The notes under the pieces were generated by a model, which made no database searches, had not been told where the DNA came from, and saw only the letters and a program-made list of their open reading frames with translations. Shown here piece after piece: positions 3,664-56,299 of a stretch of DNA of 64,000 bases. The first letter of the stretch is position 1; each line of letters begins with the position of its first letter. The translations under genes were made by a program, and so were the position numbers. The stretch is from Zootoca vivipara (taxonomy: Eukaryota). The DNA lies in NCBI RefSeq assembly GCF_963506605.1, contig NC_083276.1, positions 98,766,001 through 98,830,000 on the forward strand. The letters run 5' to 3'.

Positions 3664-4852
3664 GAAAAGTTGATCACCCATGTCAAGGCCTGCTATTATA
3701 TATACACTCCAAAAGAAGATTTTCAAATCTTTGGTTTTTTTCATGCTTAGCAAATGTCACTCCGAACAACAATTTTGCAGTGCCTGCATATGTATATAAG
3801 TTAATAGGCAAGCACCACACAGCCGAGAAAGAAGTCATCTGAAGTTTTTCTTTTCACATACCTTCAAGTGCATTACCGAATAGTCTAAATTGCATTTCAT
3901 TTGAATTTCTATTGCTGGGTAGAATGAGGCATACACCACTTTCTACAGTTATACATAATGCATTGTTCATAAGATCTTTTGTCCTGTATTATTTCCCTGT
4001 CCACAGTGAAACACCTTTTCACTGGCTAATGCTACTTTGTGCTGTATGCCTAATAAAACATCTAAATCCTTATTTTAAATTGTGGCATGGCTTTTTAAAA
4101 AGAGCAATTTCACATTTCTTTGGGAAAGCCATCTGCTTGTGAATGACAATGGTTCTCATCAGTAATTTTGAGAGGAAAAACAGTCATTACACTTTAACAC
4201 ATCTCCGGGTACTGAATAAAGAATAACACGCAACTATTATTTAAATAGACTGCATTCTTTACAGTGTGATCTTTAAAGGCCAGGCGTGTCATTATTATAA
4301 TAAGAGCATTTGTAATGGGTTGCACTGTAACTGAGGCCCAAGGTGAAGTGGCATTATCTCAAGCAGCAGCCTTTGAACAGAACATTTTGCCACAAAATAT
4401 TATTGTCATTTGTGAATCTATCTACTGCAAATATGGTAATTATCTGTTTGCTCCAACAAAGTCAATGCGGACACTGGAAACAACTTTGCTTCCTTTATCT
4501 TCCCAAAATGGCATCCACCTAAAGTAAATCAGGTTTGGGAAATGTTTATACACCTAAACATGGATAGTCTTGTGAAACATTTATTTATGAAGACCTTGCA
4601 CCAGGAACATTAAGTTCAAACAGCTCAGATAGGAATTAGAGTTCCTACCACTAAAGGAAAACATAGCTATTTATAATCACGTATGTGTTTTATTATTTAT
4701 TATTTTACGAACCACCTTTTACATGTCTCATGTGTGATTACAGCCTTCGCAATTGTTGAAGCATGCGTGTGTGTTAAGCTACCCAAGTATAAGATGTCAA
4801 GTGATAAGCTAACATATATTTCTGAATTTAGAATAGGAATGTATTGACCCCA

Positions 4853-41144: not shown

Positions 41145-41372
41145 GAACACAGGAAGCTGACATACTTAATCCATTGGTCCATCTAGCTCACTGTGTTCTA
41201 CACACAAAAAAATGCACATATTATTTATATAAATGTTCTACAATGACAGGCAGCAGCCCTTTGGGAGTTTCAGACAGGCATCTCTCCCAAACCTTCCTGG
41301 AGACACCAGGGATTGAACCTGGGGACTTTTGCATGCAAAGTGAATGCTCCACCACTGAGCTGCAGTGCCCCT
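41145..41372 (-). mobile_element. tRNA-headed SINE (Squam2-like)
   Basis: Minus-strand head gcagctcagtggtggagcattcactttgcatgcaaaagtccccaggttcaatccctgg (A and B boxes). Confidence 0.7.
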
Positions 41373-50184: not shown

Positions 50185-51779
50185 TTTTGACATGCACCTC
50201 TTATATTAGAAGCCTTGGCCATGCAAAGCACTGTTGGGGGAGCCAAATAAGAGGCACCTTACCTCCTTCCTCCAAAATACAACAGTATGGGATGAGTATG
50301 GGATGAGTTTCCAAATCAAATGTAGCTTTAAGAATCTCTCTCTTCCCGTTCCCCCTTAAAGCAGCAGCATTTCTAAAAGAACCAGGTGCTCCTTGAATGA
50401 ACCAAAGCATTTCTTTTTTAAGGAAACTTTATATGGCATCTCTATAGCTAAAACAGCACATTGTTTAACCCCACATTACAGGTCAACAACAAAGCAAATT
50501 ACAAACACATGTGTCAATAAGGATCAAGAGCTTCTATCGCTTGACCTTCTCACCAACATAACAGGAAAATCAATGCATCATCACTCTCTGTGTTTCATGC
50601 TGCTTCATTGACACAAACCTGCTGTCTAAAAATGAATGCTCTCCCCGTGGTTAGATTACTAGGTCTAAATGATCCTTTCCCCCCTTTTAGCTTTACCTTC
50701 AGACATTTACATTCTTCCAGTTTATAACCATTTTATCAGCCACATTTCTATCCCAGCCTTCCTCTAAGGAAAATTCATGTGGATTAGTTTAGTTTATCCT
50801 TAAAACACTTGTGTGAGATAGTAAGGGTGAAAGAGAGAGACTGGGGTCCTAGTCAACCCATGGCTGAGTTGAGAGTTCAACCTGGGTTTCCCCAGACCTA
50901 ACGCCACATTTCATCTACTGCACAACAATAGAGCCCCACCCAGCCTTCTGCTATGAACAAACATTTAGGGACCTGGGAGTCTGTGTGCTGGTCCCACTTC
51001 CCAGTGTTACACACCCACCAGCTCCACTTGCAACCTTGAGACAGGTAAGAAGGGTGCTTCCCAACCATGTTCAGAAGTCTGCATGTTGAACCATTCCCAC
51101 AACTGGTTACCATGTGTTTGCAATTAGGCAAATATCAATTATGTCTTTGTACATGTAAAAATTGAGCTGGCTGTTCCAAGTGAGAAGTATTGCCTATAGG
51201 AACTTTACAAAAATTGGCCTTTTAGGCCACACAAACGAGCCATACAGGAATGCATGAGCGGCTGGCTAATAAGACTTGCTGTGGGTAGTAATTCTGGTAG
51301 ATTTATTTGCAATGAATATGGTCTAATCTGGTGAATTAATCTACAGAGCTATTGCGTGAGTATTTGTAATCCTATCCTGTGCTGGAAATTAATACCAATG
51401 GCATTTATGTATATATATATTCTTTTGCATTGCCCAATTTCAAATTATGTCATTATGGAAGAAGTAAACCACAAAGCGATACATACACCCATTGATTAAT
51501 ATTTTCCCAAAGCTTACAAGTTACAATTGTTTGTGTTAAGGGACTAATAAGAACTCTAAGATTCAATAAAATCAGTAGTTCTCAACCTTCTAGTCACATT
51601 GAGTACACAAATGCTGCATCACCACAGAATAACCTTGACATAAAACTGGCCCTTTATGTAGAGCTTAGTTCTTTTACCTGAAGTGCCCATTTAAAACATG
51701 GTTCGAAGTATATTGCCAACTATCAAGGCAATAATTCTCTTCAAAGCACTTATGTCATTCACACTTTCAGACAAAAAAG

Positions 51780-52033
51780 AAAAAAATTCCTTCAGTAGCA
51801 CCTTAAAGACCAACTAAGTTTTTATTTTGGTATGAGCTTTCGTGTGCATGCACACTTCTTCAGATACAGTGAAATGGAAGTTTCCAGGCACTTATGTAGA
51901 GAAGGGGTGGGGAGGGGTGGGGATGGGGAGGGGGGATCACTCAGAAGGGTGGTGGAAATGGGTGATTGACTGACTGATAGCTGTTGATGACCGCAAACGA
52001 CTGCAAATGGTTTTGCATGAAAAAGCAAGGGTT
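51780..52033 (-). repeat. 3' pseudo-LTR of the Penelope-like element (254 bp)
   Basis: Identical by eye to 54810-55063 (offset 3030). Contains a hammerhead, a minus-strand AATAAA (51821-51826) and a G-run tract. Confidence 0.93.
51830..51867 (-). ncRNA. Minimal type-I hammerhead ribozyme in the 3' pLTR
   Basis: Minus strand GUAU-CUGAAGA-A-GUGUGCAUGCACAC-GAAA-GC-UC^AUAC. It has CUGANGA and GAAA core boxes, stem II, a GUAU/AUAC stem I and a palindromic AGCU in place of stem III. Confidence 0.85.
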
Positions 52034-52054
52034 GAGATGGCTGAAGATCGCTTA

Positions 52055-54760
52055 TCATGTATAATGAGATAAGAACCCGATATCTCTGTTCAAACCAGGT
52101 CCCTCCATGGTTTTGAGCTTGGTGATAAGTTGCAATTCAGCAACTTCTCTTTCCAGTCTATTTCTGAAATTCTTTTGTAGTAAGACAGCTACTTTGAGAT
52201 CTTCTATAGAATGTCCTGGGAGATTGAAGTGTTCTCCTACTGGTTTTTCTGTCTTCTGGTTCCTGATGTCAGATTTATGTCCATTTATCCTTTGGCGTAG
52301 GGTTTGGCCTGTTTGTCCAATATAGAGAGCTGAAGGGCACTGTTGGCATTTGATGGCATACACAATGTTAGAGGATGAGCAATTAAATAGTCCTGAGATG
52401 GTATGTTGGATGTTGTTGGGGCCAGTAATGGTGTTGTCTGGGTGTATGTGGCAGCAAAGTTGGCATCTGGGTTTATTGCAGGCTCTGGTACCAGTGTCCA
52501 TGTTAAGTCTGGTGGTTGTATTATTGTGGGTGAGGAGTTGTTTAAGATTGGGTGGCTGTCTGTAGGCAATGAAAGGTCTTCCTCCCAGAGCTTGAGAAAG
52601 GGAGCGGTCATTGTCCAGGAGAGGCTGTAGATCTCTGATGATGCGTTGTACTGTTTTAGCTTGGGAGCTGTATGTGATGACTAGTGGTGTTCTGTTATTT
52701 TCTTTTTTGGGTCTGTCTTGCAGCAGGTTCTCTCTAGGTATCTGTCTGGCTCTGTTGATCTGTTGTTTAACTTCATCAGGTGGATATTTTAGTTCTAAAA
52801 AGGTTTGCTGTAGATCTCTTAGGTGAGATTCTCTGTCTGTAGAGTTGGAACAGATGCGGTTGTAACGTAAGGCCTGGCTGTATACGATGGATTGTTTGGT
52901 ATGTTTGGGATGGTAGCTAGAAGCATGTAGATATGTTTGTCGGTCAGTTGGTTTTCTGTATAAGGTGGTGTCTATACGTCCATCCTGTATTTTTATAGTA
53001 GTGTCCAAAAAATGTATTTCTTGCATAGATTGGTTCATTGTTAGGTTGATGGTGGGGTGAAAGTCATTGAATGTCTGGTGGAAGGTTTCCAGGGTCTGTT
53101 GTCCATGTGTCCAGATAATAAAAATATCGTCAATGTATCGCAGGTACAGGAGAGGTTTGAGTGGGTAGGAGTTAAGGAAACGTTGTTCTAAATCTGCCAT
53201 GAAGATGTTGGCATACTGTGGGGCCATGCGGGTGCCCATGGCTGTGCCGCTGATCTGGAGGAACAGGTCATCACCAAATTTGAAGTGGTTGTGGGTAAGG
53301 ACAAAGTGGCAGAGTTTGGTAGCAAAGTCCGCTGTGGTTTTATCTGAAATGGTGTTCCTTATGGCTTGTAAACCATCATTGTGTGGGATGTTGGTATATA
53401 GAGATTCCACATCCATAGTGGCTAGTATAGTATTGTTAGGAAGATTGTTCAAATATTGTATTTTCCTCAGAAAATCTGTGGTGTCACGTACATAGCTGGG
53501 AGCACTGATAGCATATGGTTTCAGAACAGAGTCCACATAGCCGGAAACACCCACTGTAATGGTGCCAATACCTGAGATGATGGGGCGTCCTGGGTTTCCT
53601 GGTTTGTGTATTTTGGGTAGAAGATAGAAAGTTCCTGGCCGAGGTTCCGCTGGTGTGTTTGTGAGGATCTGTTCTTGGATGTGTAGGGGTAGCTCCTTAA
53701 TAATCTTGTTCAGTTCTTTTTTGTATGCTTGTGTGGGGTCTGAGTCCAATTTCATGTAAAAGGCAGTATTGGAAAGTTGTCTGTGGGCCTCTTGGATGTA
53801 ATCAGTTTTGTTCATGATGACGACAGCTCCACCCTTGTCTGCCTCTTTAATTATAATGTCTGGGTTGTTCCTGAGATTTTCTATGGCTCTCCTTTCAGCA
53901 TGGTTTAGATTTTGTTGTAAGCGATGGTGTTTTCTGGTCACATCCGTTTGGATTCTGTGGCGGAAGCATTCGATGTACAGATCTAGTGTGGTATTGCGTC
54001 CATCAGGAGGGGTCCATGTGGAGTCCCTTTTTGTGTAACTTCTTTTCGGTGGTAGTTGGTGGTCAATGTTCTGTTCATTGATGCGTTTGGAGGGTGATGG
54101 TTGTTCCCCAGTAAGTTGAGAGGTGTTGTGTTGTGGGGATGTAGTTTGTTCTACTTTGTCTTGTTCTTGTGTGTGATGAAAATACTCCTTCAGGCGTAAA
54201 CGGCGGAAAAATGCTTCCAGGTCCCCGCAGAACTGAATCATGTGTTGGGATTTGGCAGGGCAGAATGATAGTCCCCGTGAAAGGACGGATTCCTCAGCTG
54301 GGCTGAGTGTTTGCTGTGAAAGATTGACAATGTTGTTGATCTTGTTTTGATTGGTGGCCTGTAGGTTGGAAAGGTTGCAGAGTTTTTTATTTTTCTGGTT
54401 CTTCAGTAACTCCAGTTGAGAGTGGTAAATGGTTTGTTTTTCCTTGTGGAACTTCTGCCAGGCCGGGTGATTCCTGATGGAGTTCTCCAGTGCAGAGAGT
54501 TCCTCCTTTATTAACTTCTGTTTGGAATACAGAACGCCGATAAGATGTTTCAGCAGTTTCTTAGATAAAGTGTGGCATAGTTTTCTGGCATATTCTGTGG
54601 GATAAGTTGATTGAAGAGGGTTCTTAATTCTAAGACCCTTAGGTACAATGTCCAGGTTTTTGCATTTAGATAGAAAGAGGATGTCAGTTTGTACCTGGGC
54701 AAGTTTCTTGGTGAGGTTGATGGACTTCCATTTCATGCGGCTCAATGTGGTGCCTTCCAT
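52055..54760 (-). CDS. Penelope-like element polyprotein, 901 aa: reverse transcriptase, Cys-rich linker and GIY-YIG endonuclease
   Basis: PLE RT motifs FYLLPKIHK, GRPIISG, LATMDVESLYTNIP, QISGTAMGTRMAPQYANIFM, YLRYIDDIF (YIDD at 53126-53137), IHFLD and LYRKPT. Linker CNKPRCQLCCH (about 52448-52480). GIY-YIG-type VYAIKC...LYIGQTG...RINGH...E...GLN. No stops or frameshifts. Confidence 0.97.
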   Translation of the reverse strand: MEGTTLSRMKWKSINLTKKLAQVQTDILFLSKCKNLDIVPKGLRIKNPLQSTYPTEYARKLCHTLSKKLLKHLIGVLYSKQKLIKEELSALENSIRNHPAWQKFHKEKQTIYHSQLELLKNQKNKKLCNLSNLQATNQNKINNIVNLSQQTLSPAEESVLSRGLSFCPAKSQHMIQFCGDLEAFFRRLRLKEYFHHTQEQDKVEQTTSPQHNTSQLTGEQPSPSKRINEQNIDHQLPPKRSYTKRDSTWTPPDGRNTTLDLYIECFRHRIQTDVTRKHHRLQQNLNHAERRAIENLRNNPDIIIKEADKGGAVVIMNKTDYIQEAHRQLSNTAFYMKLDSDPTQAYKKELNKIIKELPLHIQEQILTNTPAEPRPGTFYLLPKIHKPGNPGRPIISGIGTITVGVSGYVDSVLKPYAISAPSYVRDTTDFLRKIQYLNNLPNNTILATMDVESLYTNIPHNDGLQAIRNTISDKTTADFATKLCHFVLTHNHFKFGDDLFLQISGTAMGTRMAPQYANIFMADLEQRFLNSYPLKPLLYLRYIDDIFIIWTHGQQTLETFHQTFNDFHPTINLTMNQSMQEIHFLDTTIKIQDGRIDTTLYRKPTDRQTYLHASSYHPKHTKQSIVYSQALRYNRICSNSTDRESHLRDLQQTFLELKYPPDEVKQQINRARQIPRENLLQDRPKKENNRTPLVITYSSQAKTVQRIIRDLQPLLDNDRSLSQALGGRPFIAYRQPPNLKQLLTHNNTTTRLNMDTGTRACNKPRCQLCCHIHPDNTITGPNNIQHTISGLFNCSSSNIVYAIKCQQCPSALYIGQTGQTLRQRINGHKSDIRNQKTEKPVGEHFNLPGHSIEDLKVAVLLQKNFRNRLEREVAELQLITKLKTMEGPGLNRDIGFLSHYT

Positions 54761-54809
54761 AGTTCTGGTTACAGGTAGGTAGCCGTGTTGGTCTGGATCG
54801 AAGTAAAAT

Positions 54810-55063
54810 AAAAAAATTCCTTCAGTAGCACCTTAAAGACCAACTAAGTTTTTATTTTGGTATGAGCTTTCGTGTGCATGCACACTTCTTCAGATACAGT
54901 GAAATGGAAGTTTCCAGGCACTTATGTAGAGAAGGGGTGGGGAGGGGTGGGGATGGGGAGGGGGGATCACTCAGAAGGGTGGTGGAAATGGGTGATTGAC
55001 TGACTGATAGCTGTTGATGACCGCAAACGACTGCAAATGGTTTTGCATGAAAAAGCAAGGGTT
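54810..55063 (-). repeat. 5' pseudo-LTR (partial tandem copy of the element 3' end)
   Basis: Direct repeat of 51780-52033, ending 49 nt upstream of the ATG at 54760. Confidence 0.93.
54860..54897 (-). ncRNA. Minimal type-I hammerhead ribozyme in the 5' pLTR
   Basis: Identical to the 51830-51867 motif, 3030 bp away. Confidence 0.85.
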
Positions 55064-55217
55064 TTCATGCAAAACCATTTGCAGTCGTTTGCGGTCATCA
55101 ACAGCTATCAGTCAGTCAATCACCCATTTCCACCACCCTTCTGAGTGATCCCCCCTCCCCATCCCCACCCCTCCCCACCCCTTCTCTACATAAGTGCCTG
55201 GAAACTTCCATTTCACT

Positions 55218-55255
55218 GTATCTGAAGAAGTGTGCATGCACACGAAAGCTCATAC
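55218..55255 (+). ncRNA. Minimal type-I hammerhead ribozyme in the inverted pLTR
   Basis: gtat CTGAAGA a gtgtgcatgcacac GAAA gcTC atac on the + strand. Confidence 0.85.
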
Positions 55256-56299
55256 CAAAATAAAAACTTAGTTGGTCTTTAAGGTGCTACTGAAGGAATT
55301 TTTTTATTTTACTTCGATCCAGACCAACACGGCTACCTACCTGTAACCAGACAAAAAAGAATTAATTTTATGATTTTTTTTATTGGATTTCTTGCCCAGC
55401 CCTTCACCATAAGGTCCCAGGGCAAGTTACAAGAATATAAAAAATGCAATAGTAAAATCAGTTAACACAATTTGCAAGCAAAAGAATAGGTCCTAAAATA
55501 GATATATATCTCAGCTGTCAATGAGACAGATGATGGAAGCTATATAATGAAGGTGTCTGGTGCACCTATGTGAGGAGTGAATTCCACAGTTTAGGGAATG
55601 GCAATCAGTAATTTATTTTCAAATAAATTTAATTTAAACACCAGTGTTTTGGATCTCCACATCATGACGCTGCATTAACTTATCACAGGATGGGAACAGT
55701 GTTTTTAAAGTAACGGTAAACAAACATTGAAGACATCAATAAGTACTTTACTGGACCAGCATGTTTGTAGAAATGCACCTTTGCTTTGGTTCTCCGCATA
55801 TGCCACCCACGAAACTGAATCTAAGAAAAGCAGCATCTTGTTCCCACACTGCACAGATATCATCCAAAACCTTACATCCATTAGGCTGCTTTGTTAGCAC
55901 AGCAAACAGCTGTGCAAGTGACGACTCAACATCGTTGGAGGTACCTCCTCCCATGGTTCCTTACCACACTGTAAAAAGAAACCATGCTGATAACTGACAG
56001 TGGAAACTCATACAAGAACCTTCACTTGTGTAATAGGGCTTTCCTCATCCTGCCCCTCATCCCCAAAATTGGCTCAGGGGAGCAGGAGAACCCCCAGCAC
56101 TGTGCCCAGGGAAAGGAGAGTGGGAACATTCTGTATGGCAAGCGGAAATGCTTGTGCTGCTGGAAGGATCAGCAAAGTGTGACACTGAAATATATTGTGC
56201 ATTTACAAAAAAGAAAAGAAAAAAAGAAATATATTGTGCATACATTTATTCCCCACCTGAATTTTGTCATGGACTCAAAGTAGTATACATGTGGGTATC

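What the first reader, a model, noticed from the sequence alone, without database searches (positions are those of the whole stretch)
51780..55063. Two sense hammerhead ribozymes bracket an intact Penelope RT-endonuclease ORF and define a 3030-nt self-excisable, possibly circular, RNA unit
Seen: identical minimal hammerheads at 54860-54897 and 51830-51867 (minus strand), with predicted cuts at 54864/54863 and 51834/51833. The 3030-nt unit between them holds the complete 901-aa ORF. The direct part of the insertion is about 1.08 units long, starts 54 nt downstream of a cleavage site and crosses the ribozyme junction twice without a scar. Established: Penelope-like elements carry minimal type-I hammerheads in their pLTRs, and hammerhead retrozymes make circular RNAs. 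Inference: this copy fits reverse transcription of a circularised monomer for more than one round, or of an uncleaved tandem read-through. It would be a ribozyme-processed, protein-coding and probably still active retroelement.
Basis: partly seen in the sequence, partly recalled or inferred. Interest (0 to 1): 0.85.

Follow-up and report, generated by a model that had tools for sequence, protein, structure and literature searches.

The report
Young intact Penelope retrotransposon with hammerheads
This is a recently inserted, full-length Penelope-like retrotransposon of a lizard genome with the family's usual mini hammerhead ribozymes in its terminal repeats. It is a clean example of a known architecture, and I found no sign that its RNA is cut or made circular.

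Summary
Three identical 38-nt minimal type-I hammerhead motifs lie at 51830-51867(-), 54860-54897(-) and 55218-55255(+). The repeat period is 3030 nt. The 901-aa ORF encodes a reverse transcriptase (RT) and a GIY-YIG endonuclease. A 12-14-bp target-site duplication (TSD) flanks the insertion.

The layout is the published Penelope-like element (PLE) footprint: a partial tandem (pLTR, 254 nt), an inverted 5'-truncated copy (290 nt) and a 42-43-nt "tail" at one end. The ribozyme has every trait of the PLE min-HHR of Cervera & de la Pena 2014. That paper also already proposed the circular-RNA, more-than-unit template.

- 79 distant PLE loci gave 20 sense motifs of the same build, against 1 antisense and 0 in shuffles.
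- Reads show a very abundant family. Short ~130-nt modules end at 54768 and begin at 51867.
- The outer end of the inverted arm falls on that same 3' end site (54764-54768). Both ends of the insertion are therefore RT start sites, which fits priming on both target strands (Frangieh 2024).
- No RNA ends pile up at the predicted cut, and the 5' half of the ORF has almost no RNA.

Circles are neither shown nor excluded. An uncleaved linear RNA longer than one unit is the likelier template. The scan has already noted this family many times on other DNA of this genome.

The parts
55348..55361 (-). Upstream copy of the target-site duplication, TTCTTTTTTGTCTG
   Evidence: identical to 51781-51768. 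The last four bases (TCTG) also match the end of the inverted arm (microhomology).
55062..55351 (+). Inverted 5'-truncated copy of the element (sense on the + strand). Its outer end is the family's 'tail' 3' end (site B).
   Evidence: 290/290 complementary to 54764-55053; the family's 3' ends and module joints lie at 54768/54765.
55218..55255 (+). Third identical minimal hammerhead motif, in the inverted arm
54810..55063 (-). Upstream pseudo-LTR: the second, partial unit of the direct part. The direct part starts at 55061-55063.
   Evidence: 254/254 identical to 51780-52033
54860..54897 (-). Sense minimal type-I hammerhead motif, predicted cut 54864|54863, 100 nt upstream of the ATG
54768..54809 (-). 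'Tail' segment between the two alternative 3' end / RT start sites (site A equivalent 54810, site B 54768)
   Evidence: This copy ends at site A (51780) on one side and at site B (54764-54768) on the other; joints 51867|54768 and loose ends at 54768/54765. PMC11167929 and PMC8557442 describe the 30-40-bp tail.
52055..54760 (-). 901-aa ORF: N-terminal region, PLE reverse transcriptase (YIDD 542-545), CX4CxxC linker (C761, C766, C769), and GIY-YIG endonuclease with two Cys inside the core
51780..52033 (-). Downstream pseudo-LTR, ending at the element's 3' end (GGAATTTTTTT), with no poly(A) tail
   Evidence: X1 record 1: a single-copy contig reaches 51781.
51830..51867 (-). Sense minimal hammerhead motif, predicted cut 51834|51833, 188 nt after the stop codon. 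Its 5' edge (51867/8) is where the family's ~130-nt modules begin.
51768..51781 (-). Downstream copy of the target-site duplication

Best explanation
This is a young, full-length insertion of an endonuclease-bearing Penelope-like retrotransposon. Its linker motif is of the Neptune/Nematis type. It belongs to a very abundant family of this lizard genome.

**Insertion (inferred).** The endonuclease cut both strands of a T-rich target 12-14 bp apart. The RT started cDNA at the family's fixed internal start sites, not at an RNA 3' end. On one strand it started at site A (51780) and copied 3284 nt of an RNA longer than one unit. On the other strand it started at site B (54768 equivalent) and copied 290 nt. 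The two cDNAs were joined head to head within 10 nt of the same template position. This is most simply the 5' end of one linear read-through RNA that carried two sets of start sites.

**Result.** That sequence of events gives the partial tandem (pLTR), the inverted 5' copy and the one-sided tail.

**The hammerheads.** They are the clade's conserved minimal, dimer-dependent type. In the template of this copy neither was cut. Their role is unknown. Cleavage is not needed to explain the copy.
For: **Shown here**
- Anatomy.
- RT and GIY-YIG domains. The ORF aligns along its whole length with full-length relatives, and the catalytic positions are invariant.
- 1214 relatives were found; turtle PLE proteins are 65-71% identical.
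- The hammerhead motif is non-random.
- It is conserved in sense orientation next to the ORF in distant PLE loci: 20 sense, 1 antisense, 0 in shuffles.
- Three features that my descriptor did not demand are also conserved: an extra A after A9 in 17 of 21, G10.1-C11.1 in 21 of 21, and a palindromic A15.1..U16.1 stretch in 21 of 21.
- 8 of 9 helix pairs show compensatory changes.
- Module joints 51867|54768 stand in DNA contigs, and loose ends with AT-rich, unlike flanks lie at 54768/54765.
- The arm of this copy ends at 54764-54768.
- No RNA ends are listed at 51833/4.

**From papers**
- PLEs insert as partial tandems with an inverted 5'-truncated copy and a 30-40-bp tail at one end (PMC8557442).
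- The Anolis PLE protein cleaves and extends both strands, starts RT at two internal sites, uses unprocessed RNA, and shows no RNA-seq ends at the hammerhead (PMC11167929).
Against: - The template RNA and its source locus were not seen.
- A circle copied from a fixed start site would give the same DNA.
- Part of the loose ends at 51780/51775 and 51868 are diverged subfamilies rather than insertion ends, so site A is supported mainly by this copy.
- The 8-nt loop between the arms is also what a snap-back would give.
- Only about 6% of three RNA runs of unknown tissue were read. Ends are listed only above a fifth of local depth, so a minority of cut RNA would be missed.
- Conservation of the ribozyme across the clade argues that it does something.
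Confidence: 0.7

Rival explanations
1. Circular-RNA template. Dimeric hammerheads cut a read-through RNA at 54864 and 51834. A host ligase closes the 3030-nt coding monomer. The RT starts at site A on the circle and runs 1.08 rounds.
For: - The direct part crosses both ribozyme sites seamlessly and is longer than one unit.
- A cleaved linear monomer would have its RT start sites at the wrong end, so cleavage is useful only with ligation (inference).
- Small non-LTR retrozymes related to pLTRs do form circles (PMC7229834, bioRxiv 10.64898/2026.07.22.740005).
- The idea was proposed for PLEs in PMC4209133.
Against: - No RNA ends at the cut site in three runs.
- Almost no RNA over the 5' half of the ORF.
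- Weak helix I (4 bp) and a 4-bp AGCU helix III worth about -2.5 kcal/mol. The active fold is not favoured in context.
- Min-HHRs cleave poorly in vitro (PMC4209133).
- Anolis PLE insertion does not need cleavage (PMC11167929).
- Naiad PLEs thrive without hammerheads (PMC8557442).
- Short reads cannot tell a circle junction from the tandem junction present in the genome.
Confidence: 0.1
2. Template jumping between separate linear RNAs. The RT reaches the 5' end of one unit-length RNA and jumps to the internal start site of a second RNA. This builds the pLTR without any tandem source or circle.
For: DNA contigs show the module 5' edge 51867 joined directly to the 3' site 54768. An end-to-start jump would leave exactly that joint. 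Several minor joints run to 54709-54719 and 54760.
Against: For this copy the jump would have to land so that the sequence stays the natural continuous one. The unit is defined by this copy alone, so the joint cannot be seen.
Confidence: 0.12
3. For the inverted arm only: the first cDNA snapped back on itself at the RNA 5' end and copied 290 nt of itself. The end was then joined to the target through the CAGA microhomology.
For: The loop is only 8 nt, there are 1-2 nt of overlap at the inner joint, and the arms are perfect.
Against: The arm stops within 4 nt of the family's canonical 3' end at site B. That is about a 0.2% coincidence if the stop were random over 3030 positions. Extension of both strands is shown in vitro (PMC11167929).
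Confidence: 0.2
4. The perfect repeats are an assembly artefact of a highly repeated family.
For: PLE tandem/inverted structures are known to upset assemblies (PMC8557442). The family is extremely abundant.
Against: The matching 12-14-bp TSD on both sides, the sensible junction microhomologies, the intact ORF, and a single-copy contig that reaches exactly 51781.
Confidence: 0.03

Closest known systems
Canonical EN+ Penelope-like elements (Neptune / Poseidon clades of vertebrates; Evgen'ev & Arkhipova 2005; Craig et al. 2021, PMC8557442)
   Same: [quoted passage not shown]
- pLTR from a partial tandem.
- Inverted 5'-truncated copy.
- Tail at one end.
- TSD of variable length.
- No poly(A) tail.
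- Hammerhead in the pLTR.
   Different: Nothing structural. The CX4CxxC linker places it with Neptune/Nematis rather than Penelope/Poseidon, by motif only; no tree was made. The nearest named proteins are turtle PLEs at 65-71% identity.
PAc, Poseidon of Anolis carolinensis (Frangieh et al. 2024, PMC11167929)
   Same: Two adjacent internal RT start sites that define a tail, both target strands used, an AT/T-rich target, a template longer than one unit that is not cut at the hammerhead, and no RNA-seq ends at the cut site.
   Different: In PAc the hammerhead overlaps the start codon and RT starts 111-118 nt inside the ORF. Here the hammerhead ends 100 nt upstream of the ATG, and the start sites lie 8 and 50 nt upstream of it. 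The linker type also differs.
PLE minimal hammerheads (Cervera & de la Pena 2014, PMC4209133; Lunse et al. 2017 as cited in PMC7761336)
   Same: Core CUGANGA...GAAA...UH, a 7-bp helix II with G10.1-C11.1, an unpaired A after A9, a 4-bp open helix I, no helix III, and a palindromic AGCU that can pair only between two copies.
   Different: None seen. Helix II is itself a perfect 14-nt palindrome, so a dimer paired through helix II (MFE -30.6 kcal/mol) competes with the active dimer.
Non-LTR retrozymes (Cervera & de la Pena 2020, PMC7229834; Li et al. 2026 preprint)
   Same: Hammerhead-bounded repeats related to PLE pLTRs. The ~130-nt tandem modules of this family look like that class.
   Different: Retrozymes are 170-400 nt, non-coding, and shown to be circular RNA. 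This unit is 3030 nt and coding, and no circle has been shown.

Membership tests
EN+ Penelope-like element | PLE-type reverse transcriptase with a catalytic YxDD | tested here: met
   RVT_1 1.1e-11. YIDD at residues 542-545; I543, D544 and D545 are invariant in the alignment with 11 relatives. 1214 homologues, the best carrying PF00078/PF28514/PF26215.
EN+ Penelope-like element | C-terminal GIY-YIG endonuclease with two Cys between GIY and YIG (CCHH) and R, H, E, N catalytic residues | tested here: met
   GIY-YIG 5.4e-5. Sequence VYAIKCQQCPSALYIGQT. Y801, C805, Y813, G815, R824, H828, E875 and N891 are conserved in at least 90% of the rows.
EN+ Penelope-like element | Partial-tandem pLTR, an adjacent inverted 5'-truncated copy, and a 30-40-bp tail at one end | tested here: met
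   254-nt direct repeat, 290-nt inverted repeat, and a 42-43-nt tail only at the inverted end. Definition taken from PMC8557442.
Neptune/Nematis clades of PLEs | CX2-5CxxC Zn-finger-like linker upstream of GIY-YIG | tested here: met
   C761-x4-C766-x2-C769. Clade membership by phylogeny was not tested.
PLE minimal type-I hammerhead | Catalytic core C3 U4 G5 A6 N7 G8 A9 ... G12 A13 A14 A15.1 ... U16.1 H17 | tested here: met
   CUGAAGA ... GAAA ... UC, three identical copies
PLE minimal type-I hammerhead | Long helix II with G10.1-C11.1, an unpaired nucleotide between 9 and 10.1, a short helix I, and no helix III but a palindromic 15.1-16.1 stretch | tested here: met
   7-bp helix II, an extra A, 4-bp helix I, AGCU. 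The same build is found in 21 motifs of distant PLE loci.
PLE minimal type-I hammerhead | Self-cleavage (as a dimer) | tested here: inconclusive
   No pile-up of RNA ends at 51833/4 in three RNA runs. However, only ends above a fifth of the depth are listed and about 6% of each run was read. There is no bench test.
Rfam hammerhead families | Match to a curated hammerhead covariance model | tested here: not met
   No hammerhead hit at the gathering score or at E<=10. This is expected for motifs without helix III and does not bear on the min-HHR class.
Retrozyme (circular-RNA retroelement) | Small non-coding unit bounded by hammerheads | tested here: not met
   The unit is 3030 nt and encodes a 901-aa protein.
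Retrozyme (circular-RNA retroelement) | Monomer accumulates as circular RNA | not testable with these tools
   The junction reads (54804->51775) are identical to the tandem junction present in genomic copies.

The most novel reading that the evidence does not exclude
The two sense hammerheads, acting as a protein-assisted dimer, excise a 3030-nt RNA that is ligated into a protein-coding circle. That circle is the rolling template of an autonomous Penelope-like element. This would make PLEs the autonomous counterpart of retrozymes.
Probability: 0.08. Interest if true: 0.75.

Novelty: new member of a known kind. Interest (0 to 1): 0.25.

Why it matters
The role of hammerheads in Penelope-like elements is still open, and this copy does not settle it. 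Its use is as a clean natural specimen. It has an intact ORF, identical repeats, and exact junctions on both sides. Both outer ends lie at RT start sites, which is a genomic footprint of the two-strand cleavage and extension so far shown only in vitro for an Anolis element. It also ties the genome's very abundant ~130-nt hammerhead modules to their autonomous partner.

Tried and rejected
- **Rfam**. No hammerhead model matched. The miRNA-like hits at 54937-55179 are below their gathering scores and only reflect the perfect hairpin.
- **Other copies in the window.** blastn and tblastn of the element against the window found none.
The DNA around the turtle relatives (P0003, P0005, P0007) could not be read, so I used metagenome loci instead.
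- **PDB sequence search** of the ORF: no match.
- **Fold of the region between the cut site and the ATG.** A GUUGGUCU/AGACCAAC stem puts site A in a loop, but the fold is no better than shuffles (z -0.51), so I dropped it.
- **Strand of the RNA reads.** It is mixed and comes from many loci, so I did not use it.
- **Loose ends at 51780/51775 and 51868.** Their consensus resembles diverged tail and pLTR sequence, so I did not count them as insertion ends.
- **Findings searches** for a two-strand priming note or another intact copy gave nothing useful.
- **Consensus sequences.** I built no consensus of the element. The protein alignment tool printed a majority line, which I did not use.
Full report
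**What is there**

On the minus strand the insertion runs from about 55347 to 51780. It is flanked by TTCTTTTTTGTCTG at 55361-55348 and at 51781-51768. The first two T are shared with the element's terminal T run, so the duplication is 12-14 bp. In sense order the insertion has two parts.

- An inverted segment, 55351-55062. It is the exact reverse complement of 54764-55053, 290 of 290 bases.
- A direct part, 55063->51780, of 3284 nt. Its first 254 nt (55063-54810) are repeated without a single change at 52033-51780, so the period is 3030 nt.

The ORF 54760-52055 encodes 901 aa with RVT_1 and GIY-YIG domains. It aligns over its whole length with full-length relatives. The I-D-D of the RT YIDD motif is invariant in the alignment. 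The GIY-YIG residues (Y801, Y813, G815, R824, H828, E875, N891), the two Cys inside the GIY-YIG core and the CX4CxxC linker are conserved in at least 90% of the rows. That linker marks the Neptune/Nematis clades and is absent from Penelope/Poseidon (PMC8557442). I made no tree.

The closest named proteins are turtle PLE proteins at 65-71% identity. One unnamed Logan protein is 95% identical. No other copy of the family lies in the window.

**The hammerheads**

The 38-nt motif GUAU-CUGAAGA-A-GUGUGCAUGCACAC-GAAA-GC-UC|AUAC occurs three times with identical sequence. Two copies are in sense, at 54860-54897 and 51830-51867. One is in the inverted arm, at 55218-55255 on the plus strand.

A descriptor with helix I of at least 4 bp, CUGANGA, 0-1 extra base, helix II of at least 4 bp, GAAA, 0-4 bases and UH finds only these three sites in the window. 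It finds none in 200 shuffled windows. Rfam's hammerhead models do not match even at E<=10. That is expected for motifs without helix III.

Each trait matches what Cervera & de la Pena 2014 list for metazoan PLE min-HHRs (PMC4209133):
- a long helix II;
- a helix I of 4-5 bp;
- an unpaired base between positions 9 and 10.1;
- G10.1-C11.1;
- a palindromic 15.1-16.1 stretch (here AGCU) that can form helix III only between two copies.

I tested this on independent DNA. 79 metagenome loci encode PLE proteins 29-43% identical to this ORF. They hold 20 such motifs in sense to the ORF and 1 in antisense, against 0.0 in shuffles. In locus L055 two sense motifs bracket the ORF, as here. Three features that my descriptor did not demand hold throughout:
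- the extra base is present in 17 of 21 and is always A;
- the 10.1-11.1 pair is G-C in 21 of 21;
- the stretch from A15.1 to U16.1 is a palindrome in 21 of 21.

Eight of nine helix pairs show compensatory changes. Pairing itself was a selection criterion, so that count is partly built in.

**Folding**

- Alone, the motif folds into helix I plus helix II at -6.8 kcal/mol.
- The AGCU/AGCU duplex is worth about -2.5 kcal/mol.
- The most stable dimer pairs the palindromic helix II strands between molecules (-30.6 kcal/mol).
- In the 274-nt and 303-nt pLTR contexts the minimum-energy fold does not form helix I.
- With the inverted arm present, the upstream motif is buried in a -589 kcal/mol hairpin.

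This agrees with the low in vitro activity of min-HHRs (PMC4209133) and with the protein-assisted cleavage reported for the Anolis element (PMC11167929).

**What the reads add**

I laid three RNA runs (raw reads) and one DNA run (contigs) of the same species on 51500-54804.

*DNA run.*
- The single-copy flank has depth 59, and one contig reaches exactly 51781.
- Summed contig depth over the element rises from about 4-8 x 10^4 at the ORF 5' end to about 1.3 x 10^6 at its 3' end. It reaches about 3.5 x 10^6 over the hammerhead-to-tail segment.
- The tool warns that this is not a copy number. The gradient is that of a very abundant family that is mostly 5'-truncated.
- Contigs join 51867 (also 51863, 51866 and 51868) directly to 54768. 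These are head-to-tail modules of about 130 nt that run from the 5' edge of the hammerhead to a fixed 3' end.
- Loose ends with unlike, AT-rich flanks lie at 54768/54765.
- Minor joints reach 54760 and 54709-54719.

*Caveat on the loose ends.* The loose ends at 51780/51775 and 51868 partly resemble diverged tail and pLTR sequence. I do not count them as insertion ends.

*RNA runs.*
- Almost all reads lie on the short module and run on into unlike sequence, so they come from copies embedded in other transcripts.
- The 5' half of the ORF has a depth of about 0-10.
- No begin or end pile-up is listed at 51833/51834. The listing threshold is a fifth of the local depth, and only about 6% of each run was read.
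- The 'goes back 3030' joints (54804->51775) are the tandem junction that genomic copies already contain. They say nothing about circles.

**How the copy most likely arose**

The 3' end of this copy (51780) lies 53-54 nt beyond a hammerhead cut site, and the copy carries no poly(A). This is the PLE signature. The RT starts at fixed internal sites of an RNA that continues further, and two adjacent start sites define an optional 30-40-bp tail (PMC11167929, PMC8557442).

Here the two sites are 42-43 nt apart, at 54810 and 54768. The direct part ends at the first. The outer end of the inverted arm lies at 54764-54768, which is the second site, with CAGA microhomology to the target. Both ends of the insertion are therefore RT start sites. 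A snap-back cDNA that stopped at random would hit that site about once in 500 times.

I therefore read the inverted arm as a second cDNA primed from the other nicked strand. This matches the cleavage and extension of both strands shown in vitro for PAc (PMC11167929), and the 'tail at one end only' of PMC8557442.

The two cDNAs end within 10 nt of the same unit position (55063 and 55053). The simplest account is one linear RNA with two sets of start sites, whose 5' end lay there. The first cDNA would then have jumped onto the 3' end of the second. That last step is inference.

**Circle or read-through**

The template was longer than one unit and was not cut at either hammerhead. Cervera & de la Pena raised the circle model for PLEs in 2014 (PMC4209133).

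Against the circle:
- no ends at the cut site here or in Anolis (PMC11167929);
- insertion in vitro from unprocessed RNA and with ribozyme mutants (PMC11167929);
- weak folding;
- hammerhead-free Naiads that proliferate well (PMC8557442).

In addition, the 5' ends of the family's modules lie at the 5' edge of the motif (51867/8), not at the cut (51833). So the templates that were copied carried an uncut ribozyme.

For the circle:
- a cut linear monomer would have its RT start sites at the wrong end;
- the ribozyme is conserved across the clade.

I put the circle at about 0.1.

**Age and activity**

There is no change in 254 + 290 duplicated bases and the TSD is perfect, so the insertion is recent. 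At reptile-like rates of about 1-2 x 10^-9 per site per year this means under roughly 1-2 Myr (my estimate). Many contig pieces are at least 99% identical, so the family was active recently.

Whether this copy is expressed is not shown. Its upstream pLTR is locked in a 290-bp hairpin in any transcript that includes both arms.

**Standing**

This is a good specimen of a known kind. The scan holds 171 notes on hammerhead/Penelope items, and all those shown are from this genome. Follow-ups there reached the same reading of the 130-nt module and of the tandem-plus-inverted footprint. I reached the module and end sites before reading those notes.

Noticed in passing
window 51781-51867 plus 54768-54810 (module): The hammerhead-to-tail segment is about 50-100 times deeper in DNA contigs than the ORF 5' end. 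It occurs as head-to-tail modules of about 130 nt (joints 51867|54768). This is a non-autonomous, retrozyme-like offshoot of the family.
   Followed up: partly
window 51892-51898 and 54922-54928 (minus strand): A TATA-like TACATAA lies 25-31 nt upstream of the module's fixed 5' edge (51867/8). The edge may therefore be a transcription start inside the pLTR. A second TATA-like ATTATACA (52058-52065) lies 25-32 nt upstream of the unit position where both cDNAs of this copy end. Both readings come from the sequence only.
   Followed up: no
window 54851-54856 and 51821-51826 (minus strand): An AATAAA hexamer lies directly after the predicted ribozyme cut, 41 nt before the element's 3' end. The insertion has no poly(A) tail.
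   Followed up: no
window 54937-55179: Rfam miRNA-precursor models (MIR1858 at 117.8 bits, below its cut-off of 137, and others) match the 290-bp perfect hairpin. This is an effect of the inverted repeat, not a miRNA gene.
   Followed up: yes
window 41298-41369 (minus strand): A borderline tRNA match (29.4 bits against a cut-off of 29) with several non-standard pairs in the acceptor stem. It may be a tRNA-derived repeat or a pseudogene.
   Followed up: no
window 52055-52500, run X24: One RNA run covers the last ~450 nt of the ORF at up to about 500 reads, with many variant letters, while the rest of the ORF is nearly empty. These are transcripts of 5'-truncated copies elsewhere, not of a full-length element.
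   Followed up: no
L055:578-616 and 4511-4549; L068:3788-3826: A PLE of an unknown eukaryote, on a 127-kb metagenome contig, has identical sense min-HHRs 3933 nt apart bracketing its ORF. This is the same layout as in the window.
   Followed up: partly
window 51780-55351 (note s1-855473): Another first-stage note places the element in sense in intron 1 of LRP1B. I did not check the host gene.
   Followed up: no
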